Origin: Dicyema japonicum
Lineage: Eukaryota; Animalia; Dicyemida
DNA length: 40,681 nt
Assembly (NCBI GenBank): GCA_011109175.1
Contig: RDEW01000090.1
Coordinates: 70,094 to 110,774 of the forward strand
Direction: 5' to 3'
Below, in pieces: positions 9,840 to 21,160 of this stretch. The position numbers and the translations under genes were made by a program. The notes beneath the pieces were generated by a model. That model did no database searches. It saw only the letters and a list, made by a program, of their open reading frames with translations, and was not told where the DNA came from. The first letter of the stretch is position 1; each line of letters starts with the position of its first letter.

Positions 9840-11940
9840 CGTAACGATAAACCTATTTCTATCGACATCTCATTGTCATCACCGTCCTTGGCAATTTTAT
9901 TGACTGCTCAGTGAAGTGTGACTCCAGAAGTGACCACAATCCAATATTTTTGGAGGTCAAAACAAGGTCACGGATAAAGTGACAATGCCCAACGATAACT
10001 AACTACAGCCTTGCGAATTGGAGATGATTCCGTCGATAATTGTATTGGACTATTAAATTTCCCCACTCCTCCATCAGTCGAACAATTAGTGAAATGGTTT
10101 AACTCCACCATAAACGCTGCCTATGGGGAAACAATCTACGTCATCAAAACGTTTCAACACAACGACGAAACATCTGATCAGAGGACGAAATAATCTAAAG
10201 ATGGTAAAATCGCCAACAGAAGAAAACATCAGAAAAAAACGAGAATTGAACAGAGAGATCGACAACAACAGAAAGGCAGAGATTGCAAATAGATGAACGA
10301 GGCTATCGAAGGCTTTCTGCAAGAACCACCCAATGTAGAGAGTGTGGAAGTGGATCAAGAACATCAAAAGATTCTCTCCAGAGAGAATTGTCAAAGTCTA
10401 CATAAAACCAGACACTCTGATAAAATATTACACGTCTATCTCCTACAAGAAGTACACTAAGTATTCCTGAATAAGATTGAAACGAAACGCTCCGATGACT
10501 GGATCCTATTTACTAGTCAGGATGTTCGCAGAGCCATATTAAAGGCCAACAACTCAGAGGCCAAAGGACCAGACAACATAACCACATGTGAACTGAGGCA
10601 CCTAGGTCATCGAGCCCTGGAATTATTAGCCTATATCTTCAACCTATCCATTAACACAAATACAATCCCTGGAAGATGGAAGAAGTCTCTAATCAGACCT
10701 ATCCGAAAACCCAACAAACCAATAAATGAACCATCTTTTTATCGCCTAATATATATTCTAAGTCCGGTCTCAAGGATCCTTGAAAGGCTTGTTTTGGAAA
10801 AAAATACAAAACTCAATCTCAATACCTCCGACCCAGCACGGATTCCGGGATAATCATTTGACAACAACACACCTTACAACCCTCACACAATTCATTGCGG
10901 AAGGATTTAACTCCCCCAAACCCCACCAGAGGACAGTAATTATACCCGTGGACATCTCAAAAGCGTTCGACTCAGTCCCTAGAAAACTCCTAACAAAGAA
11001 AATATTTGAAACCAACATCCATCCGAACCTGAAACTTTGGCTTGGAAACTTCCTAAATGGAAGACGAGCACAAGTACTCTGCAACAACATCAAATCAAGA
11101 TCTCGCTATTTCCCAAATGGAGTCCCTCAAGGATACTCAGTCCGCTCAACAAATGCTTGACAAGCTAACTATGACTCTCGAAGCGGTCTTTTGTCACACT
11201 GTTTACCACCTACAAAAACAGGTAACCAAAAAGAACGAAGCTATTCCTATTAACAAAACACAGAATATTCTGGGAGTAACCTTTGATCAGGGACTCACCT
11301 TTATCCGACATGTTGAAAACAAAGTAACTTCTGCTCTGAAAAAAATGTGAATTTTAAAAGTGCTCTCAAAAATACTTAGAGACCGAACTAGTGGCCTTAC
11401 CACGATTTATGAACAATTTATCCGACTAACGATGACGTATGCAATCCTTCATGGGAAATGCAGATTTCACTATCCTCCTCATTGAAACTATCTGCAATCT
11501 AGGGGACTGAATAAAGTTAATTGACCAGAACACAAAATCCAGCCTATTGAAAATTTCTTAATCGAATTACAACGGAAACTCTTAAAGGAGGCTATTTTAC
11601 CGAGCTGCCCTCTATTCCATACACCATTGAAATATCTACAATCATCATAAATTTTGAGATCAGAACACAAAATCCAGCCTATTGAAAATTTCTTAATCGA
11701 ATTACAACAGAAACTCTTAAAGGAGGCTATTTTACCGAGCTGCCCTATATTCCATACACTATCGAATTATCTACGATCATCATAAGTTTTGAGCCGATGC
11801 CATGTCCAATGAGAAGATTCTCGACCCAACTGGACTCGTCCTCTCGTTTGTCGGTCTAGGATCACTTAGTTAGATGAAAACTTTTATTTCTTTTCTTTGA
11901 CCCAGTGATCCTGGGGGTAATAATAATAATACTAATAATT
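9840..11940 (+). mobile_element. Jockey/I-like LINE ORF2 (APE end, RT, thumb), pseudogenised with the YADD region deleted
   Basis: SDHNPIFLEV, AKGPDNIT, WKKSLIRPIRKPNKP, QHGFR, VDISKAFDSVP, GVPQG, then a direct jump to ILGVTFDQGLTF. (TAA)n-like tail at about 11918-11940. 135-bp duplication at 11526/11661. Confidence 0.85.
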
Positions 11941-12052
11941 CATAGGTATTAAAGACTGTATAATCAAGTCAAAGAGATACTCATGANGAGAGCCAAAATG
12001 TCTATAGCTACGCATAGGCAGGACACACACTTTATTTAAGTAAAGAACAATT

Positions 12053-12101
12053 GATTGCAAAGAGAACTGGCGAAAGCGAGTCCTCTTGAGGAGTACCAAT
12101 C
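12053..12101 (-). mobile_element. Isolated ~50-bp RTE RT domain-4 fragment
   Basis: Closely matches the sequence at about 6508-6557; minus strand reads IGTPQEDSLSPVLFAI. Confidence 0.5.
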
Positions 12102-12576
12102 TAGGCTCCGTTGATTTTTTTGTTCCCTCGAAACTTTTGGAAAAACGTCAGCGGCTGGTTGGGATTATTTGGATGGACCTATATTTTAATAAAATATAAG
12201 AACCCTTCGTAAATGCTGACTTAATCTAGAAAGCTTCATAGCCTCGTTAAAAAATGACTTTGAGCATAATATGTCGCGAGAGCTACCTGCAACTACGCGC
12301 TACTTGCAATATCGATTTTTTTCCTCGAAATTAAACGAATAGTCTTATGACACTCACAAGTCGAACTCAGTAAAAGAAACCAGTTTTCTCAAAAAAACAT
12401 GAAACTAAAATAATATAAAGATTTATGTTATGCTTTAAAAATTATAAAATTGAATTTATTTTTTAAATCCAATATTTTAAACAATTTAAAATCCCAGGTT
12501 AGACGATTGTATTCATTTAAGTTTCAATTAAGACAAAAAATTCAAAAAAAATATTTTATTTATAAGAAAGGATAAG

Positions 12577-13122
12577 TCACTTCTTTTTAAGCTTTTTAAC
12601 GCGACTCATGTGGACGATCTCGGTATGTCCCTCATTCGATTGAAGTGTCATTCGCTTGTTAGACAATATATCTACGACTTTCACTTTTTCACTGTAGGGA
12701 AATTCAAATTTCCTTAACTTAGCGAGGGATTGTTGCTAATATATGATTTTCTTCATCATATTCCTTAAGACTTTTGGCAAAAAGACATGTCTCACAATTG
12801 GAAACAACATCGCGAATAACATCTCTTTTCACAAAAAATATCGTTCTTTACAATATGTTTCTAGGTTGTTTTGGCCACAATGTGTTAAATCATGAATTTG
12901 AGTAGCGACAAACTTCATTTCCTCAACGTTGTCCGAATCAATAACCAATTTATCGCCTTCTGGGTCTTTTAGATACATTCTTCCTTCTTTAAGAACGAAG
13001 CTCTTGGACTTTTTTCGGATCCTGCACATAGCACATGCAGGCACATCAGTAGGTAAGCCTCCTTCCAGAATAATTTTGAGATTATCATATTCAACAGATG
13101 TCTTAACAAACAAGCGTGACAT
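12577..13122 (-). pseudogene. Integrase remnant: HHCC zinc-binding domain joined to the C-terminal module, DDE core absent
   Basis: QIHDLTHCG...KERYF, then a frameshift to VKRDVIRDVVSNCETC (H-x3-H...C-x2-C). Next in another frame is KVKVVDILSNKRMTLQSNEGHTEIVHMSRVKKL, with TGA at 12577-12579. Confidence 0.8.
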
Positions 13123-13132
13123 AACAATTCAA

Positions 13133-13495
13133 ATTATTATTATTATTATAAGCAACTACATAGAATCATATAAACTATAATTCTATTCGTGCCGCGTCTG
13201 AACAATCCTCTTAATTAGCCTTTCCCATCCCCTCCTGTCCTATGCCAAGTGCCGCAGACTACTAAGGTCTTCACCGTCCTTTAGTAGTCTGGTTACTGAT
13301 CTCAGGTCACCATTAAGGACTTCCGGAAGAGTTATTCTTGGACGACCTCTGAACTTCTCCCCTGACGTATCGAAGTATTCTTCCATGACGACGTTTGCTG
13401 GCGTGTCTTGTTCCAATCTGAGAATATGGCCAAACAATCTCCAGCGAGCCTTCATGATCATGGTGCTCAGAGGTCCGGAACCGCATCTTCTATAT
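13133..13495 (-). mobile_element. 5'-truncated RTE-like insertion nested in the Ginger-like element
   Basis: KARWRLFGHILRL...FRGRPRITLPEVLNGDL. (TAA)n tail at about 13133-13150, roughly 10 bp upstream of the integrase ATG. Confidence 0.85.
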
Positions 13496-13904
13496 AATTA
13501 GTATTAATAGTTTATAATAATTTTATACAATAAAATTAATATTTTATATTACTAAAAATTAGAATTTTAATCCAAAAGAACAATTTTTATAGATTCAAAA
13601 AAATTCAAAAAATTCAAAAAATCGATATTGCAGGTAGCGCATAGTTGCAAGTAGCGCTCGCGACATAATAAACAGAAAGGTTATTTCCATCATTAGTAGA
13701 TGCGATGAAAACATATTTTAAATATTAAATATTACATAAAAAATTTTTTTTATTTAGTGTCTTTTGCTCCATTGTTATACAATACCTATACACCGCAAAT
13801 GACGCTAGTGTCAATTTGAAAATACAGGTTCACAATACTAAAATTCTATTTCTGTAAACATTTTTACCGCAAAATCAACGAATTAGAAAAAGTTAAAAGT
13901 TAAC

Positions 13905-14445
13905 TACTAACTAAGTTATCCCGGTTTTCCGGGTTCTGGCTCTCGTTCGGGTCCTCGAAGATCCTACAGAATTGATAAAAACGGGGACGGTCTCATTCTC
14001 CATAGATTCCCCGCATTTTCAAGATAGTCAAATATAGAGTGAAAGCGGACAGCCGTTTTTCATAGCCCACTGTAGAAATAACTTCATTCTTTACCTTAGA
14101 TGTTCTTTAAGATTCATTACGTTATTCACATTTTTCTTATTAATTATTTTTAAGGCAGTTGGTTGTGCGGCTTCTAATTTTTGAGACTTTTGAGACGACG
14201 ATTCAGGTATCAGCTTCAGAAAGGACATGCGTAATCGATTGCTGGCAGTATGTATTGTCTGTAAATTTTCTGTAGTAAGAAGGTGTTGTGCCCAATTGGT
14301 GATCGGGACATAATTTTCAATATGCTGGTTATAATGTCATTGAAGTGTTCGCCGAATGTCAAGAGAGTATCCAACTTTAATCCTAGTGAAATATATGGAG
14401 TCGAATAAAGGAGGCGGAAGCGATTGGTTAACAAAATCATCAAAG
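13905..14445 (-). mobile_element. Jockey/I-like LINE 3' fragment
   Basis: YISLGLKLDTLLTFGEHF...IYRQYILPAIDYACPF (RT domain 7 and thumb). Confidence 0.65.
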
Positions 14446-14599
14446 TGCTAATAGTAAGTGAAAATAAGACATTTTATTAAAAAGTAAGTTAAAATTAAAG
14501 TTGTTATGAGGTCTCCATTATGACCTGGAAATATTGAACACGCGATGGGAGATACCTTTTATAATCTCGAGCACAATGTTCTGGAAAAGCCATCGCGTC

Positions 14600-14810
14600 A
14601 TTCTAGGTTCACCCTTCCTCTTCTTTACAGCTGCCCGATTAACCTGATAAACTCATTAACCTGATCCGATTTCGCAGTGAGATGTTCACTGATGACGGCG
14701 TCATTCGTCAAGCCAAAGCATTTTATATGCGTGGAACTTTTATCCGGAATGTACAGCTGCGAGATTCGAACTATGATTCCTCAGGCCATTTACAGCTCTC
14801 ATAACAACGC
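14600..14810 (-). mobile_element. Putative tRNA-derived SINE, copy A
   Basis: Minus strand has the B-box-like AGTTCGAATCT followed by a 31-bp core identical to 29931-29961. Confidence 0.55.
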
Positions 14811-14959
14811 CAAATCGGAATGTAATATTATAGTTTATTGAAGATAATGTTAATTTATTGTATTTTATGATTTTTTAATAAAATGTAATATAAAGTAATT
14901 TATTTATTTTAAGAATATGAAGGTTATTTTGGTTGAGGTGGTGACGTCCCTCTCGAAAA

Positions 14960-17950
14960 GTATGTCTGAAAAACACGAAAATTGCAACCTAAATGACTTC
15001 TCTCTTTTAACGTTCAACGTCAGAGGACTCTCTAGTGCATGGAAAAGAAAAGAACTTTGTGAAGACCTTTCAAAATACAAGATATCATTCGGATGTTTCC
15101 AAGAGACAAAATTATCGAAGGAGTTTGAAGAACACGGAATGTTTCAGTTAATCTTTCTCTCTGAGGATCAAAACATTACGGACTTGGATTTCCTGTAAGA
15201 AAGGACCTACTCCGGCGCATATACCGTTACTGGACTATCAATGAAATGATTGGGATTTTACAAATAACATTGTACGATCATAACTCTCCGAAGAGTTATC
15301 TTACAATTATTAACGCATATGCTCCACATAGTGGATGGATCAATAAGAAACCCGAGGAAATTGACGACTTTTATGCGAATCTGTCTGATGTTTATTCCAA
15401 TTATGCAAATTCCACATTAATATTGATTGCCGGTGATCTTAATGCAAAAGTTGGAAATCGAATCACTATAGAAGAAGCATTCATTGGAAGACATGGAAGG
15501 GGAAAAAGGAACATTGCAGAAACCTTGTTAGCTAGCTTTTGTCAAGCAAATTATCTATTTTTTGTAACACGGACTTTATCCACTCTGCAAGACACAGGAC
15601 AGCTTGGTCAGGCAATAGAACTAAGTCTGACGGAAGCATTGCGAAAATCTACAATCAAATAGACTACATTATTTGCAGACAAAAAGACCGCAGTATTGTC
15701 ACTGATGCCCGTGCTTATGAAGGGTCTATAATTGACAGCGATCACAAGATGGTTATTGGCAATATGTCGATAAAGAAACTTATGGATTTGTAAGGGATGA
15801 AAAGAAAGTGCAATGGACACACGGACTGAGGGGGAAGGGATAAGTTTTAGACCATTTAAAGAACAATACTATCCGGGGAGAGGAATTCTGAAAATACCTC
15901 GATGAGGGATTGGAAGAAATATCAGCAGATTTGGCACCGCAAATTGCGTGGACCTTGGTCAAACAGAAGATCATGATTGCTGCGGATATATACCTGAAAG
16001 AGGACTACGTAACTAATACACCTACTGAAGAAGGGACCGCTTTGAAACGCCTTGCTAATCAACAAAAGGCGATATGGATACATTGTCTAAAAACAGATGA
16101 CAAAAATACGAAACAGCGGATACAAAAGAAAAGAACAGTCATCAAAAACAATAAGAAAAGCTGCACGTCAAATTTAAAGAACGAAACAACAACAAAAATA
16201 GAGAAAATCGAAGGCCTTTAAAGACAATGCGAAGTTTTTATGAAGCTGTCGGACAAATCAGAAAACTTCCAAGGAAAACATTGACTTTACGATATGAAAA
16301 AGGAAAACATATTGCTAACCAACAAAAAATGCAGAACTTATAGCGGATTATTTTGAAGCACAATTTGTATCAGAAAATAGGAAAAAACTCACCATTAACA
16401 GGGATCAGGGAAATTTGGACGAAGAATTAACTTTGGAAGAAGTATTGAGAGCAAGTTTCAAACTGAAGGACAATAAGAGTCCTTGCCAAGATGGCTTAAA
16501 TGGTGAATTTTTCAAATATGGAACTCAAAAACTATACATGGTAATTGCCTGGATTCTAAACGAAACGTATACTGTAGGAGCCACTTTGTCACTTGGAGAA
16601 GGACTATTATACCAGTACAGAAGCCAAACAAAAAATCGGGTAATGTTGAGAACCTAAAATCAGTGGTCTTAACCAACAAACTACGAAAGATACTAGCCAA
16701 ACAAATGGAGAAGTGCGACTGTTCAAAAATTTAAAATAACGACAACCATTCTGGGGATTGATATGTCAAAGGCTTTTGATTACATCAACAGGATCAAGCT
16801 GCTGCAAATACTGGAGCACTTTTTGGAAAGCTCAACGATTAGGATGGTCAGGACACTCGTGACGGACACGAGTTTGATGGTCAGGACTGCTAAAGCTTTA
16901 TCGAGGACATTTGGTTCCTCTCAAGGAAATCCATTATCCCCGATTTTGTTTATTTGGAAAGCTCAACGATTAGGATGGTCAGGACACTCGTGACGGACAC
17001 GAGTTTGATGGTCAGGACTGCTAAAGCTTTATCGAGGACATTTGGTTCCTCTCAAGGAAATCCATTATCCCCGATTTTGTTTATTATTTATCTGGAGGCA
17101 GCTCTACGAGACTTGAAGCCTCATATCAGAGAAGGAAAGAGCATAATAGCATATGCAGACGACGTGGACTTTATTTTGAATAACATATAAGAGTTAATTG
17201 CACTTTTTGTAGAAAATGCCTGATAAAATGGCTGAGTGGTCATTAAAAGTAAACACAAACAAAACCGAAATCACGGAGCTAAAAAGAAGTGAGGAAAGGA
17301 CCGAGGATCACTGGCGTAGATCAAAAAACTAAAAATGCCTGATAAAATGGCTGAGTGGTCATTAAAAGTAAACACAAACAAAACCGAAATCACGGAGCTA
17401 AAGAGAAGTGAGGAAAGGACCGAGGAACACTAGCGTAGATCAAAAAACTAGGATCCCTTCTCGGTGACACCGAAGATACAACACGAAGGAAGACACTAAC
17501 TAATCTCCCGTTCAACAAAATGAATAAGATCTGGCCTCTGCACAAAGGGTTTGACCCTAAAACTCGAATGAGACTATTCAATGCCCTAGTGAGGCCAAAC
17601 CTATTATACAATGCCGGTACATGGGCATGTACAAGGCAGGAACTCGAAAAGTTGAATTTTTTTCACAGAAATCATCTCCGACGCCACGATATGGGGAGGA
17701 GTATTTTGTCTTAGAAGCTTATCGTTTCTGCTGCCGGACGAGGACAACACTGCCGGGTATTCTAGATGAAGATCTCAAGAGGATTGGAAAGTGCCTTAAA
17801 GATGGGGACGATCTAGATATACTACGGAACATGGCAACGGATCGAAAAAGATGGGGGACGTTAATTAGATTGATAACTTTTTGTGTTGCACATGTTTTGT
17901 CATGATCTTGGCATCGCTTACGTGCCTACAATAATAACATGAAGGTTATG
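14960..17950 (+). mobile_element. Near-full-length RTE-like LINE (APE + RT), pseudogenised
   Basis: LLTFNVRGL, FQETK, NAYAPH, AGDLNAKVG, NQIDYII, DSDHKMV, NKSPCQDG, IDMSKAFD, SQGNPLSPILF, AYADDVDF (17152-17163), LLYNAGTW. Frameshifts, plus duplications of 131 bp (16823/16954) and 119 bp (17213/17332). Confidence 0.9.
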
Positions 17951-18359
17951 ACTAGACTAACGTGTCCTTCTTCTTTTGCAAGATCTTAACCAGCCATCCA
18001 CATGACTACTTCATCGGATCCGGGTTTGTCTTCATCTTGCCACCCGATATTCTATTCCTCTTGAAACAAAATGCTTATGTTCTCCTAAAGTAAGAATAGG
18101 ATTACGTCAAAGATGAGAGGCCTCTGTTAACTCCGTTTTCAGAATCTATATCATCTTTTATGATTTAACTCCCATAAGTATACCTGCTGATAAAACCGAA
18201 TATTTCATGATCACCCATCATTAAGAGAGCTATGGTGTATGCATTATGTTGACAAGCAATGCTTATTTTAAATTATTTATGTTCGATATATTCGATTGTT
18301 TCTTCACTAACGATCATTTTCAACTCAGTCAAAGCTATATGAAAACAATCTATTATTTA

Positions 18360-19000
18360 TCTAATCCTGAAGCCTGGGAAACCAAAGGAAGACTCCGGCT
18401 CCTAGGGACCGATGTCGCTTCTGTATTGTGCAGACAAGAATTTCAGAAAGACTTGTTATGACACTCATCCGCCCTTTCCTCCCTGACGCATGGTTTCAGC
18501 ATGGCTTCAAAGAGTGAACGTCGACTGTCTTTGACACCTAAATGCATTAAAGGAATTCATAAAAGATTGCCTAAACGACGACGATTATTTGCTTAGTTGA
18601 AAGAGTGAACGTCGACTGTCTTTGACACCTAAATGCATTAAAGGAATTCATAAAAGATTGCCTATACGACGACGATTATTTGCTTAGTTGACAAATTTGA
18701 CTCTGTCGTAAGATCACCACAAAAAAATTATTCGTCGATCAATGACGCAAATCTAAGTTATGGTTGGGGAATTTCTTGAGATGTCTCCGAGGGCGAGTAC
18801 GCCAGGGTAATCGATGTTCATCATCCAGACTATTATTACCAAACGAGGTTCCTTCGGGTTCCCCATTATCTCCAGTCATATGCAATCTAATTACGAATGA
18901 CTTAACAATTCAACAAGATGACGACACATTAAGGTCCTACGCGGATGATATTGTTGTTTCACAACCATCAATAAAGCTAATGAATTCTTGAAGTATTTTT
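18360..19000 (+). mobile_element. Jockey/I-like RT fragment
   Basis: ILKPGKPKEDSGS, FQHGFK, EVPSGSPLSPVICNL, RSYADDIVV (18938-18949). 91-bp duplication at 18509/18600. Confidence 0.75.
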
Positions 19001-19093
19001 TTTACGAAAGCTCCTTTTTCTCAATTTCGAGTGCAGGGAATCCACCATAAAATGTTAAAATTCAGACTAAAGGCGATTCTTTGTGAAAGTCCT

Positions 19094-21160
19094 TTATTTC
19101 AAAACAATCTTTTCAGAGATATAGAATACATACATCAATAGCGATTTTCTCCTTATTAGAGAGCTTGAGACAGAAATTCGGTGTNNNNNNNNNNNNNNNN
19201 NNNNNNNNNNNNNNNNNNNNNNNNNNNNNNNNNNNNNNNNNNNNNNNNNNNNNNNNNNNNNNNNNNNNNNNNNNNNNNNNNNNNNNNNNNNNNNNNNNNN
19301 NNNNNNNNNNNNNNNNNNNNNNNNNNNNNNNNNNNNNNNNNNNNNNNNNNNNNNNNNNNNNNNNNNNNNNNNNNNNNNNNNNNNNNNNNNNNNNNNNNNN
19401 NNNNNNNNNNNNNNNNNNNNNNNNNNNNNNNNNNNNNNNNNNNNNNNNNNNNNNNNNNNNNNNNNNNNNNNNNNNNNNNNNNNNNNNNNNNNNNNNNNNN
19501 NNNNNNNNNNNNNNNNNNNNNNNNNNNNNNNNNNNNNNNNNNNNNNNNNNNNNNNNNNNNNNNNNNNNNNNNNNNNNNNNNNNNNNNNNNNNNNNNNNNN
19601 NNNNNNNNNNNNNNNNNNNNNNNNNNNNNATCTTTGAGCCGTTGCACACCGCCACCTGTGGCTCCACAGAATGTCCGCTGTCGACCTTCCTTCACGAAAT
19701 CCACTATGGCATGCTGATAGGTAATTTCCTGCAGGATGTTTTAAGCGGTCCAAAGCAACAGATGCAAGAACTTTTCGTAATGTGTTTAACAATATGACTG
19801 GGCGTTTGCTTTCTAGTGGTCCCTTTGGTTTGTTAGGCTTTTGTATAGGTATCAATGTCCCTTTCCCCAGTGGTATGACAGAGTTGGATGTAAACATTCC
19901 ATTTAACAATGTCGCAATGGTTTCGAATAGACGCATAGGTCCATATTTCAGCAGTTCGGGAGGGATGTTGTCTGGTCCAGCGCTCCTGTGATTCTTTAGC
20001 TTACTGCACGCACTCTGAACTTCTTTAGATGTGATAATTGTTTCCAGCATCCGCGGTTCTCCGATGAAAGGGGCCAGTTCTTGGCCGTTCGCATTGAACA
20101 GTTTTTCAAAATGGGCAGCAATCAATTCGATCTGTTCATCTGGTTTTAAGATAAGTTTCCCCTTCCCATCCATAACATGTACTGTCGCTTTTTTCTTTCC
20201 TCGCATTAGTCGGACTGCAACGAACATTTGTGCATTGTCCTTTAGTTGCTCCAGCTCTCTAAGATGTGATAGGAAGACATCCTTCGAGTGTTCATTATTA
20301 AGCTTCATGATTCTTCTCTTGATAATATTTCGTTCAGTTCGTAGTTTGTTTTTGATATTTATATCTGTCGTGTTTAGACTCTGTATCCATATTTCTCGTT
20401 GTTGTTTTGCCAGTGATAAGGAGTCTGGATGGCCAAGTGACATATTTCCGGTTGTCTGCCGTCTCACTCCAAGGTGGGTGTTTGCGGCAAGGCAAATAAT
20501 GCTTTTGGTCTGATCCCATAGGTCTTGTATAGTCATATTAGCTGGTAATGTATATAGGTGGTTCTCTATATGTTTTTGGAAGTTTGTCACCAGCAGCGGC
20601 TGAGACCAGAGCTTCTCAGTCATATATACATGGGTATGGTAAGGTGGTATCGTTTTGCTTAGACTCAGGTTCTTCCTACCAATGTAGTATTTCTTCAAGG
20701 AGAACTTGCCAATAACCATTTTATGGTCACTATTTATCATCGACCTTCCATAAGAACGGGCATCATTCAGTAGGTGTTTGTTCTTGGTCCGACAAATGAT
20801 GTAATCAATTTGATTATAAATATTGACACTTTTGTTTTCCGAGTTCGTTCTATGGCCAGTCCATGTGCTCCTGTGGCGAGCTGGGTGCATAAAGGCAGTT
20901 TTTCCTATGAAAAGATCATTCGCTTGACAGAAAGTGTTCCCGGGGTGTTTCTCCACCCCCGTCCATGCCTGCCGATGAACGATTCCTCTCCACTGCGTCG
21001 CATCCCAACTTTAGCGTTAAAGTCCCCGGCAATAAATATCAACGACGAAGATTCGTATTCCATATATTGATTGACCTTGAAAATTGTATTGAGAAACTGG
21101 AGTTTTTGTTGAATGACGATTAGTTTCTTAGTGTTTTTTGTTAGATTTGCATTCATATGT
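19094..21160 (-). mobile_element. RTE-like LINE (APE through RT domain 2) running into a gap
   Basis: FIAGDFNAKVG, then a frameshift into an uninterrupted frame at 19630-20956 with YNQIDYII, SDHKMV, RSAGPDNIP, IPIQKPNKP, RPVILLNTLRKVL, SGFREGRSTAD. Confidence 0.9.
19185..19629. other. Assembly gap
   Basis: Run of N. Confidence 1.

What the first reader, a model, noticed from the sequence alone, without database searches (positions are those of the whole stretch)
12267..13670. Ginger-like integrase DNA transposon with TIRs, 5-bp TSD and a cleanly deleted catalytic core
Seen: 50-bp TIRs (TGTCGCGAG...CTCGCGACA, 46/50 identical), a perfect TAATA target duplication, an HHCC finger (H-x3-H...C-x2-C) and an integrase-type C-terminal module (...EIVHMSRVKKL) abutting each other with no DDE core and no LTRs. 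Established: Ginger1 and Ginger2/Tdd are cut-and-paste transposons with Gypsy-related integrases, TGT termini and short TSDs. Inference: a non-autonomous derivative (about 1.0 kb without the nested RTE) of a probably undescribed family, mobilised in trans. The TIRs and TSD are invisible in the ORF track.
Basis: partly seen in the sequence, partly recalled or inferred. Interest (0 to 1): 0.75.

Follow-up and report, generated by a model that had tools for sequence, protein, structure and literature searches.

The report
Gutted Ginger-type transposon in Dicyema
This is a dead, internally deleted copy of a small cut-and-paste jumping gene whose enzyme is built like a retroviral integrase. The family (about 40 copies) is real and I found no description of it for the octopus parasite Dicyema japonicum, but it is a new member of a known class, not a new kind of element.

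Summary
Window 12272-13665 is bounded by 50-bp inverted repeats (46/50, TGTCG...CGACA) and a perfect TAATA duplication.

- **Family:** the assembly holds 73 such termini. Of 14 paired copies, 11 have perfect 5-bp duplications, never 6, and the target is TAWTA.
- **Empty sites:** by coordinates, seven paralogues of the repeat it landed in are empty sites.
- **Long copies:** copies of about 2.0 kb encode a roughly 424-aa HHCC + DDE + SH3-like integrase. The gene is split by six GT-AG micro-introns of 24-28 nt. All copies inspected are damaged.
- **This copy:** it lacks 867 bp (end of exon 1 to start of exon 7, all of D, D and E). It carries a 5'-truncated piece of a very young LINE.
- **Other deletion subfamilies:** they share breakpoints at many loci, so trans-mobilisation is shown for the family, not for this copy.
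- **Relatives:** they are nearly all stand-alone 400-470-aa proteins without RT. The nearest named ones are mis-annotated microsporidian 'Gag-Pol'.

By structure it fits Ginger2/TDD. In my tree it sits in a supported clade apart from OTU-bearing (Ginger1-type) and KRBA2/SCAND3-like proteins. Repbase references could not be included.

The scan flagged this family before on other DNA (s1-573895, s1-579333, s1-309995, s1-360666, s1-293887).

The parts
12267..12271 (.). Left copy of the 5-bp target-site duplication (TAATA)
   Evidence: In seven paralogous repeat copies the left-flank and right-flank matches overlap by exactly these 5 bp.
12272..12321 (+). TIR at the 3' (ORF-distal) end of the element. 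It starts TGTCG and holds two 13-bp subrepeats GCTACYTGCAA-type, 17 bp apart.
   Evidence: 46/50 matches to the other arm; 73 such termini in the genome.
12322..12576 (-). 3' subterminal non-coding region. It has an 85-bp deletion relative to long copies at about 12469.
   Evidence: reference 1702|1788.
12577..12731 (-). Remnant of exon 7: the last ~50 codons of the transposase (SH3-like C-terminal module ...FEFPY...EIVHMSRVKKLKKK) plus the stop codon.
   Evidence: Collinear with the C-termini of relatives.
12731..12732 (.). Deletion junction: reference 573-1439 (867 bp) is missing. That stretch holds the end of exon 1 with the first D, exons 2-6, all six introns and the start of exon 7.
   Evidence: The same junction occurs in C157:94092-95486 and C348:97133-97503.
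12732..13122 (-). Remnant of exon 1: start codon at 13120-13122, N-terminal extension domain and HHCC zinc finger. A 1-nt frameshift lies near 12829-12832.
   Evidence: Integrase_H2C2 scores 1.7e-4 on the unbroken C312 copy.
13132..13495 (-). Nested 5'-truncated 3' end of a very young LINE: the last 84 codons of its ORF, a short UTR and a (TAA)n tail. It sits in the transposon's 5' UTR, 10 bp upstream of the ATG. The ends are uncertain by about 5 bp because the tail and a possible TAATT duplication overlap.
   Evidence: at least 40 copies at 98-100% identity; in other copies the same peptide ends ORFs of up to 995-1013 aa.
13496..13615 (-). 5' subterminal region of the transposon, upstream of the transposase gene.
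   Evidence: reference 51-169.
13616..13665 (-). TIR at the 5' (ORF-proximal) end. Its first 30 nt match the family consensus perfectly.
13666..13670 (.). Right copy of the 5-bp target-site duplication (TAATA)

Best explanation
Window 12272-13665 is a non-autonomous, coding-dead copy of a multi-copy TIR DNA transposon family of the Ginger/TDD type in Dicyema japonicum.

Shown:
- The full-size element is about 1.95-2.0 kb. It has 50-bp TIRs (TGTCG...) and one gene of seven exons and six 24-28-nt GT-AG introns.
- The gene encodes a roughly 424-aa integrase-type transposase: N-terminal extension, HHCC finger, DDE RNase-H-fold core and an SH3-like C-terminal domain.

Inferred from the retroviral/Ty3 integrase paradigm and from the TSDs:
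- The enzyme binds the paired subrepeats in each TIR and cuts at the TG...CA ends.
- It joins the 3' ends to target phosphates staggered by 5 bp at TAWTA. Repair then gives the 5-bp duplication.

This copy:
- It inserted at a TAATA inside another repeat.
- It lost 867 bp, including all three catalytic residues, probably by microhomology-mediated or abortive gap repair.
- It acquired a frameshift and an 85-bp deletion.
- It was then hit by a young LINE, and the whole locus was later duplicated (or survives as a second haplotype) on C157.
- With both TIRs intact it could only have moved using transposase from another copy. No intact source copy was seen, so the family looks extinct or nearly so.
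For: - **TIR and TSD in the window:**
- **Family size:** 73 termini against 0 in the control, 47 of them perfect over 30 nt.
- **TSDs:** 14 paired copies, 11 with perfect 5-bp TSDs, none extending to 6 bp. TAATA/TATTA flanks 22 of 32 independent ends. The non-consensus TSDs TACTT, GTATA and TAATG are also duplicated.
- **Empty sites:** left- and right-flank matches overlap by exactly 5 bp in seven paralogues.
- **Core in long copies:** rve scores 7e-15 and 1e-11, with H2C2 hits. D, D and E align with invariant columns of relatives.
- **Introns:** GT-AG, 24-28 nt. Removing them restores frame and collinearity with intronless homologues at introns 1, 2, 3 and 6.
- **Deletion map:**
- **Shared-junction subfamilies at many loci:** 1096|1343 in 7 loci; 189-191|insert|1393-97 in 7 loci.
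- **Relatives:** 5891 hits. Among the top 150, 60 are 380-480 aa and only one exceeds 700 aa; most full-length matches start near residue 1. 1 of 80 carries RT/RNase H. TIR-bounded 2.4-3.5-kb metagenomic contigs encode relatives.
- **Structure:** the AF2 model of a relative best matches full-length PFV integrase and then Ty3 integrase.
Against: - No intact autonomous copy was found. The longest open frame in same-family copies is 257 aa, but only the best-scoring candidates were examined.
- Excision itself (cut-and-paste versus copy-in) is not shown. The empty sites are paralogues, not excision footprints, and were inferred from coordinates because no more genome sequence could be fetched.
- Splicing of the micro-introns has no RNA evidence here.
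- For this particular deletion derivative, only one independent TSD-flanked locus is documented.
- Assignment to Ginger2/TDD rather than to a separate lineage was not tested against Repbase or TDD-4 sequences.
Confidence: 0.88

Rival explanations
1. It is a remnant of a Gypsy-type LTR retrotransposon (an integrase fragment between rearranged LTR pieces), not a DNA transposon.
For: The enzyme is of the Gypsy/retroviral integrase type. TG...CA termini and 5-bp TSDs are also typical of LTR elements (PMC2836005).
Against: - The repeats are inverted, not direct, and only 50 bp long.
- The 2-kb full-size copies have no room for gag, PR, RT or RNase H, and none was found.
- The gene keeps six introns in all copies, which an RNA-mediated cycle would be expected to remove.
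- 79 of 80 relatives lack RT.
Confidence: 0.02
2. It is a pseudogene of a domesticated host integrase gene (GIN1, KRBA2 or Imagin type) that happens to lie between inverted repeats.
For: Host genes derived from Ginger transposases exist and carry introns (PMC2836005, PMC3575427, PMC12863088).
Against: - About 40 copies share the same TIRs at the same distance from the gene. Each has its own TSD and flanks.
- All copies decay independently.
- The deletion derivatives have amplified.
Confidence: 0.02
3. The family is a Ginger1 element (a close Gypsy/Athila relative), not Ginger2/TDD-like.
For: The C-terminal domain has a GD-x-V ... F-P-Y ... VH-x-S-x-VKK pattern reminiscent of the GPY/F module. 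A roughly 75-aa region precedes the zinc finger, where Ginger1 has the YPYY motif.
Against: - The TSD is 5 bp and AT-rich, not 4-bp CCGG/CCGT.
- There is no OTU or Ulp1/PHD domain: the protein ends about 60 aa after the SH3-like start.
- In the tree, all six OTU-bearing proteins fall outside the 49-row clade that holds the Dicyema family (UFboot 95 / SH-aLRT 92).
Confidence: 0.07
4. It belongs to another integrase-bearing DNA transposon group: IS3EU/GingerRoot or a Polinton/Maverick fragment.
For: These groups also encode integrase-related DDE enzymes and have TIRs.
Against: - IS3EU/GingerRoot elements have TA...TA termini and 6-bp TSDs, and lack the HHCC architecture seen here.
- Polintons have 6-bp TSDs, AG...CT termini and are 15-20 kb with pPolB (PMC6839031, PMC10045372).
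- Here the termini are TGT...ACA, the TSD is 5 bp, the element is 2 kb and it has one gene.
Confidence: 0.01

Closest known systems
Ginger2/TDD DNA transposons (TDD-4, TDD-5 of Dictyostelium; metazoan Ginger2 families; Bao, Kapitonov and Jurka 2010, PMC2836005)
   Same: - TIR-bounded single-gene elements with TGTNR termini.
- TIRs of about 50-300 bp.
- H2C2 + DDE integrase-type transposase with no protease or PHD add-ons.
- AT-rich, quasi-palindromic target.
- TSD of 4 or 5 bp (5 bp in TDD-4/5; PMC10045372).
   Different: - Metazoan Ginger2 families were reported with 4-bp TSDs at RTATAY. This family makes 5-bp TSDs at TAWTA.
- At about 2.0 kb it is smaller than any listed Ginger2 (2.8-6.6 kb).
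- The gene has six 24-28-nt introns.
- It has an SH3-like C-terminus with an F-P-Y motif, whereas Ginger2 is said to lack GPY/F.
- In my tree it is not inside the clade holding KRBA2/SCAND3-like (Ginger2-derived) proteins. TDD-4 and Repbase sequences could not be included.
Ginger1 DNA transposons and their domesticated GIN1/GIN2/Imagin genes
   Same: - TIRs and TGTNR termini.
- Gypsy-like integrase with a zinc finger, DDE core and a C-terminal SH3/GPY-F-type module.
- Introns in the transposase gene.
   Different: - Ginger1 makes 4-bp CCGG/CCGT TSDs.
- Its transposase is 500-800 aa with an OTU or Ulp1 (+PHD) domain.
- OTU-bearing relatives fall outside the clade of this family.
Retroviral and Ty3/Gypsy integrases (PFV intasome 3OYM/3L2Q; Ty3 7Q5B)
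   Same: The predicted four-domain layout of a close relative (N-terminal extension, HHCC NTD, RNase-H-fold CCD, beta-barrel CTD) aligns over its whole length with PFV integrase. A 4-6-bp staggered strand transfer explains the TSD.
   Different: The enzyme stands alone in a TIR element, with no RT, LTRs or RNA intermediate. Sequence identity to the solved integrases is only 13-18% over full-length alignments, up to 28% over the catalytic core alone.
Internal-deletion non-autonomous derivatives of class II elements (Ac/Ds, P element KP, MITE precursors)
   Same: Both ends are kept, the catalytic middle is removed at a junction with short microhomology, and such derivatives amplify using transposase made elsewhere.
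   Different: Nothing unusual. For this particular derivative, amplification is not demonstrated.

Membership tests
Ginger superfamily sensu lato (TIR element with Gypsy-type integrase) | Terminal inverted repeats ending in TGTNR...YNACA | tested here: met
   The termini read TGTCG...CGACA. The TIRs are 50 bp in the window and the same termini occur at 73 sites genome-wide.
Ginger superfamily sensu lato (TIR element with Gypsy-type integrase) | Transposase with an H2C2 zinc finger and a DDE integrase core; no RT, RNase H or LTR | tested here: met
   In long copies rve scores 7e-15 and Integrase_H2C2 scores 1.7e-4, which is below Pfam's cut-off. H, H, C, C, D, D and E align to invariant columns of relatives. 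The 2-kb elements hold only this gene. The window copy itself lacks the core.
Ginger2/TDD | TSD of 4 or 5 bp | tested here: met
   The TSD is 5 bp in 11 of 14 paired copies and never 6.
Ginger2/TDD | Preference for an AT-rich palindromic target (RTATAY in Nematostella Ginger2) | tested here: inconclusive
   The target is TAWTA (T 84%, A 98%, W, T 98%, A 84%). It is AT-rich and quasi-palindromic, but the motif and stagger differ.
Ginger2/TDD | [quoted passage not shown] | tested here: inconclusive
   An SH3-like C-terminal domain with F-P-Y (relatives: S-F-Y) is present. Whether it counts as GPY/F, and whether the pre-finger region is YPYY, could not be judged without the reference alignments.
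Ginger2/TDD | Transposase groups phylogenetically with TDD-4/5 and Repbase Ginger2 | not testable with these tools
   No reference sequences were obtainable by reference. In my tree the family lies in a 49-row clade (95/92) that excludes the proteins labelled KRBA2/SCAND3-like. Deeper nodes are unresolved.
Ginger1 | 4-bp TSD, CCGG or CCGT | tested here: not met
   The TSDs are 5-bp TAWTA.
Ginger1 | C-terminal OTU or Ulp1 (+PHD) domain on a 500-800-aa transposase | tested here: not met
   The gene model gives about 424 aa and ends right after the SH3-like module. There is no OTU hit in the clade, and the six OTU-bearing relatives lie outside it.
IS3EU/GingerRoot | TA...TA termini and 6-bp TSD | tested here: not met
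   The termini are TG...CA and the TSD is 5 bp.
Gypsy LTR retrotransposon | Direct LTRs and a pol with RT/RNase H upstream of the integrase | tested here: not met
   The repeats are inverted, the elements are 2 kb, and there is no RT. Introns are retained.
RTE-clade LINE (the nested insert only) | Single long APE-RT ORF of about 1 kaa, short 3' UTR, short tandem-repeat tail, RT in the RTE clade | tested here: inconclusive
   The same peptide ends ORFs of 995-1013 aa in other copies. A (TAA)n tail and variable 5' truncation are present. Pfam and Atlas gave nothing on the 84-aa piece. The RT clade was not examined.

The most novel reading that the evidence does not exclude
The Dicyema family and its relatives may form a distinct third lineage of Ginger-type transposons. 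Its members would be compact stand-alone integrases of about 420 aa with a PFV-like four-domain layout, and (shown so far only for the Dicyema family) 5-bp TAWTA duplications. It would be separate from OTU-bearing Ginger1 and from the KRBA2/SCAND3-type Ginger2 branch. Its closest named members sit in microsporidia (Dictyocoela, Nosema, Pseudoloma). That pattern would point to horizontal transfer among parasites of marine or aquatic invertebrates. The six host-sized micro-introns would then have been acquired or reshaped inside the transposon after it arrived in dicyemids.
Probability: 0.25. Interest if true: 0.55.

Novelty: new member of a known kind. Interest (0 to 1): 0.35.

Why it matters
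**For genome annotation.** About half of the D. japonicum genome is repeats, and the genome paper's main text mentions only LINEs among the mobile elements. This adds a curated class II family with exact ends, a TSD rule, a gene model and deletion subfamilies.

**For transposon biology.** Ginger-type elements are the DNA-transposon cousins of LTR-retroelement integrases and remain sparsely described. Three features are useful data points for how integrase-type transposases diversify and adapt to a host's splicing regime:
- a metazoan family with TDD-like 5-bp duplications;
- the smallest element size so far;
- a transposase gene broken by six 24-28-nt introns.

The sister relationship to microsporidian copies is a testable lead for horizontal transfer.

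None of this overturns current understanding.

Tried and rejected
- **Intact autonomous copy.** I searched the genome with the N-terminal and core peptides. The best same-family open frame is 257 aa, so none was found among the scored candidates.
- **Empty-site sequences.** A reconstructed empty site found no paralogue among the loci already held.
- **Contigs of the closest relatives.** It gave TIR-bounded contigs, mostly for more distant relatives. One in-clade contig has 194-bp terminal inverted repeats cut by the contig ends. One distant relative has TGT termini and a 4-bp TSD.
- **Tiled alignment.** Including exons 4-6 misaligned and they were dropped.
- **Spliced protein.** The joined (spliced) protein was never submitted to a search or fold. 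Exon pieces were used by reference, and a full-length natural relative (P0001) was folded instead.
- **Classifying the nested LINE piece.** Pfam and the ESM Atlas gave nothing.
- **Names as clade markers.** 'KRBA2-like' names proved unreliable: one such protein is a fragment of an OTU-bearing protein.
- **Recurrent insertions near the ATG.** I considered this and rejected it for my sample. The foreign DNA at reference 189-191 in at least 6 loci is one shared sequence, inherited from a single event.
Full report
**What is at the coordinates**

The sequence shows TAATA at 12267-12271 and again at 13666-13670. Between them lie two inverted arms, 12272-12321 and 13616-13665. They match at 46 of 50 positions, begin TGTCG, and lose all similarity at position 51. 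Each arm contains two 13-bp direct subrepeats (GCGCTACYTGCAA type), 17 bp apart.

On the minus strand there are three coding remnants:
- an ORF from an ATG at 13122 that ends in ..IHDLTHCG.. (H-x3-H);
- after a one-base frameshift, ..SNCETC.. (C-x2-C);
- about 30 codons later, in another frame, ..FEFPYSEKVKVVDILSNKR...EIVHMSRVKKLKKK-stop.

No DDE core lies between them.

**Which genome**

The assembly has 67,542,437 bases in 377 contigs. This is exactly the published Dicyema japonicum assembly: 67.5 Mb, 377 scaffolds, 49% repeats, mean intron 38 bp (PMC6736024). Earlier notes of this scan had reached the same identification. It is not human.

**It is a family, and the ends and duplications are real**

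Both ends of the element recur throughout the genome. A 30-nt TIR consensus with up to 3 mismatches occurs 73 times (34 forward, 39 reverse), 47 of them perfect. The reversed control pattern occurs 0 times.

In the loci I could fetch I paired 14 copies:
- 11 have perfect 5-bp duplications;
- the other three match at 3-4 of 5 positions;
- none extends to 6 bp.

TAATA or its complement TATTA flanks 22 of 32 independent ends. The symmetrised profile is T(84%) A(98%) W T(98%) A(84%). The non-consensus sites TACTT, GTATA and TAATG are duplicated just as exactly. The duplication is therefore not a side effect of target preference.

The element in the window landed inside another repeat of about 350 bp. 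In seven paralogues of that repeat, the match to the left flank (ending with TAATA) and the match to the right flank (starting with TAATA) overlap by exactly 5 bp. That is the signature of empty sites with a single copy of the 5-mer.

**The full-size element and its gene**

Copies of 1.95-2.0 kb carry the missing middle between the same TIRs: C13:1300355-1302338, C201:662517-664461 and C312:617500-619469. A 2.28-kb copy, C345:193227-195509, carries it too.
- Pieces of the middle hit Pfam rve at 7e-15 and 1e-11.
- The unbroken N-terminal piece hits Integrase_H2C2 at 1.7e-4, below Pfam's cut-off.

An alignment of 16 copies shows six short segments bounded by GT and AG, 24-28 nt long. Removing them restores one reading frame of about 424 codons.

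At introns 1, 2, 3 and 6, removal also restores residue-for-residue collinearity with intronless homologues. Examples are ..PRSQG|IVERFNQT.. and ..GDE|VCVKKDHGTNPSLKL.. Introns 4 and 5 lie in a variable linker and rest on GT-AG, length and frame only.

These are host-type micro-introns. Their persistence in all copies argues for DNA-mediated transposition. There is no RNA evidence here.

Every copy I inspected has frameshifts or stops. The longest same-family open frame is 257 aa.

**What happened to the window copy**

Relative to the C13 reference (copies are 93-96% identical), the window copy has this layout:

| Segment | Content |
|---|---|
| 1 | reference 1-169 |
| 2 | a 364-bp foreign insert |
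| 3 | reference 170-572 |
| 4 | deletion of 573-1439 (867 bp) |
| 5 | reference 1440-1702 |
| 6 | an 85-bp deletion |
| 7 | reference 1788-1984 |

The large deletion runs from just after ..ATRP in exon 1 to ..GTN|PSL.. in exon 7. It removes all three catalytic residues, exons 2-6 and all six introns. The junction (about 12731/12732) has at most 4 nt of microhomology.

The same junction occurs in two other places:
- C157:94092-95486, whose flanks are 97.8% identical to the window over 2.7 kb. This is a segmental duplicate or an unmerged haplotype, and it also carries the nested insert.
- A truncated fragment at C348:97133-97503, in a different downstream context.

**The nested insert**

The insert (13132-13495, minus strand) sits 10 bp upstream of the transposase ATG and ends in (TAA)n.
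- It is 98-100% identical to at least 40 other copies.
- Its last 84 codons are the C-terminus of a single ORF that reaches 995-1013 aa in other copies, with every degree of 5' truncation.

It is therefore a 5'-truncated piece of a very young LINE, much younger than its host element. The 'RTE' label is plausible. Its RT clade was not tested, and Pfam and the Atlas were uninformative.

**Trans-mobilisation**

Other deletion derivatives share exact breakpoints at many loci with different flanks and TSDs:
- 1096|1343 at seven loci;
- a lineage in which a foreign sequence replaces everything from codon 4 to reference about 1393, at seven loci, down to 637-bp MITE-like copies.

These coding-dead elements must have been moved by transposase supplied in trans. 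For the window's own derivative this is only suggested.

TIR ends are better conserved than the interiors. 64% of termini are perfect over 30 nt, against about 21% expected at 5% divergence (my calculation). This is consistent with selection on the ends during amplification.

**Relatives**

The spliced protein has no reference, so I did not search or fold it. Instead I tiled ten unaltered exon pieces from different copies (A2) and ran the profile against 1.84 billion representatives.
- There were 5891 hits, 33 of them below 1e-30.
- Among the best 150, 60 are 380-480 aa and 50 are fragments under 300 aa. Most full-length ones match from about residue 1.
- Only one is longer than 700 aa.
- Of 80 relatives scanned with Pfam, 79 have rve, 41 H2C2, 6 OTU and 4 chromo. 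One has RT/RNase H.

Full-length relatives share the whole architecture with the Dicyema protein, including the N-terminal EY..I..L motif and the C-terminal GD.V.V.KDFD.N..TKK.KL.SFY...LSNNR...V...VKK module.

The only named close relatives are microsporidian proteins annotated 'Gag-Pol polyprotein' or 'transposable element' (Dictyocoela roeselum and D. muelleri, Nosema granulosis, Pseudoloma). They are 360-458 aa and 40-55% identical to the Dicyema pieces. Further out come 'KRAB-A domain-containing protein 2-like' and 'SCAN domain-containing protein 3-like' proteins, and OTU-bearing proteins.

An AlphaFold2 model of P0001 (pLDDT 80.5) is most similar over its full length to prototype foamy virus integrase, and then to Ty3 integrase. 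It has an N-terminal extension domain, HHCC domain, RNase-H-fold core and beta-barrel C-terminal domain.

**Tree**

I built an IQ-TREE careful search (LG+C20 PMSF) on 245 profile columns of 80 relatives plus six unaltered Dicyema pieces entered as fragments.
- The Dicyema pieces are monophyletic (100/100).
- They are sister to the two Dictyocoela proteins (100/99).
- They lie inside a 49-row clade (95/92) that contains no OTU-bearing, KRBA2/SCAND3-labelled, chromodomain or RT-bearing protein.

Relations among the big clades are unresolved. The labels are imperfect: one 'KRBA2-like' entry is a fragment of an OTU protein. The 49 rows were chosen as best hits. No Repbase Ginger or TDD sequence could be included.

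Metagenomic contigs encoding relatives are often bounded by 40-190-bp inverted repeats at 2.4-3.5 kb. One contig, whose own ORF found no tree match, shows TGT...ACA termini with a 4-bp TSD.

**Classification**

By the published criteria (PMC2836005, PMC10045372):

| Group | Result |
|---|---|
| Ginger superfamily | Definition met: TGTNR termini and a stand-alone H2C2-DDE integrase |
| Ginger1 | Fails: 4-bp CCGG TSD and OTU/Ulp1 domain both absent |
| IS3EU/GingerRoot | Fails on termini and TSD |
| Polinton | Fails on termini, TSD and size |
| LTR elements | Fails: no LTRs, no RT |
| Ginger2/TDD | Fits on TSD length (5 bp, as in TDD-4/5), AT-rich palindromic target, TIR size and lack of accessory domains |

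Open points for Ginger2/TDD:
- whether the F-P-Y SH3-like module counts as GPY/F;
- whether the family groups phylogenetically with the reference Ginger2 sequences.

I file it as a new family of the Ginger/TDD kind, most like Ginger2/TDD. There is roughly a one-in-four chance that its clade deserves separate rank.

**Novelty and literature**

The genome paper's main text mentions only LINEs and says nothing about DNA transposons or integrases. Text searches for Ginger together with dicyemids or microsporidia found nothing relevant. Repbase could not be consulted.

The scan's own earlier readers flagged the same family on other stretches of this genome. I confirm their points on micro-introns and the 5-bp TA-N-TA target.

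**Verdict**

This is a correct and careful first reading of an ordinary kind of object: a gutted, LINE-interrupted copy of an apparently undescribed Ginger/TDD-type transposon family. It is worth a Repbase/Dfam entry and a line in a dicyemid repeat annotation. The microsporidian link and the intron-laden transposase gene are the only leads with wider interest.

Noticed in passing
window 12100-12271 plus 13666-13850: The transposon sits inside another repeat of about 350 bp with at least 12 paralogues at 82-94% identity. Its nature (SINE or MITE) was not examined.
   Followed up: partly
window 11990-12056 and 13861-13960: Two short high-copy repeats: a 67-bp unit with at least 20 copies at 91-93%, and a ~100-bp unit with at least 25 copies at 92-94%. 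They may be SINE parts.
   Followed up: no
window 13132-13495 (-), and C1:1391546, C18:68928, C113:189556 and others: A very young LINE family: at least 40 copies at 98-100% identity, with a single ORF of up to 995-1013 aa and a (TAA)n tail. It is probably still active.
   Followed up: partly
window 11802-14668 and 18800-19184, against C157:92592-96986: A 97.8%-identical duplicate of this locus lies on another scaffold (an unmerged haplotype or a segmental duplication). The window has an extra ~4.1 kb at 14668-18800. C157 has an extra ~1 kb at window 11986/11988.
   Followed up: partly
L023/L028 (C1:2257253-2258928), L025/L039 (C68:638847-640533), L010, L007, L030, L022: A non-autonomous subfamily in which a shared foreign sequence (starting CCCACGTTGTTGTGG) replaces the gene from codon 4 onward, at 6 or more loci. 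This is one capture event that was inherited.
   Followed up: partly
L043, L044, L042 (C24:898160, 902209, 906252): A 637-bp MITE-like copy with identical TSD and flanks occurs three times at ~4.05-kb spacing. This is a tandem segmental triplication.
   Followed up: no
G000: C354:128177-128572, C46:1122229-1122621, C112:231101-231514, C43:33273-33671 and many others: Several other families of the same integrase type occur at 43-73% aa identity. Some have many stop-free copies and open frames of 328-382 aa, so the genome may hold younger or active Ginger-like families.
   Followed up: no
P0001, P0155, P0152, P0156 (microsporidian proteins): Stand-alone 360-458-aa integrase-type proteins of Dictyocoela, Nosema and Pseudoloma are annotated 'Gag-Pol polyprotein' but lack gag, PR and RT. 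The Dictyocoela proteins are the sister group of the Dicyema family (100/99).
   Followed up: partly
L126:842-3603; L104, L112, L125, L136, L142: Metagenomic contigs encoding relatives are bounded by 43-194-bp inverted repeats. L126 has TGT...ACA termini and a 4-bp TGGT duplication. Several ~2.9-kb contigs begin and end inside their TIRs.
   Followed up: partly
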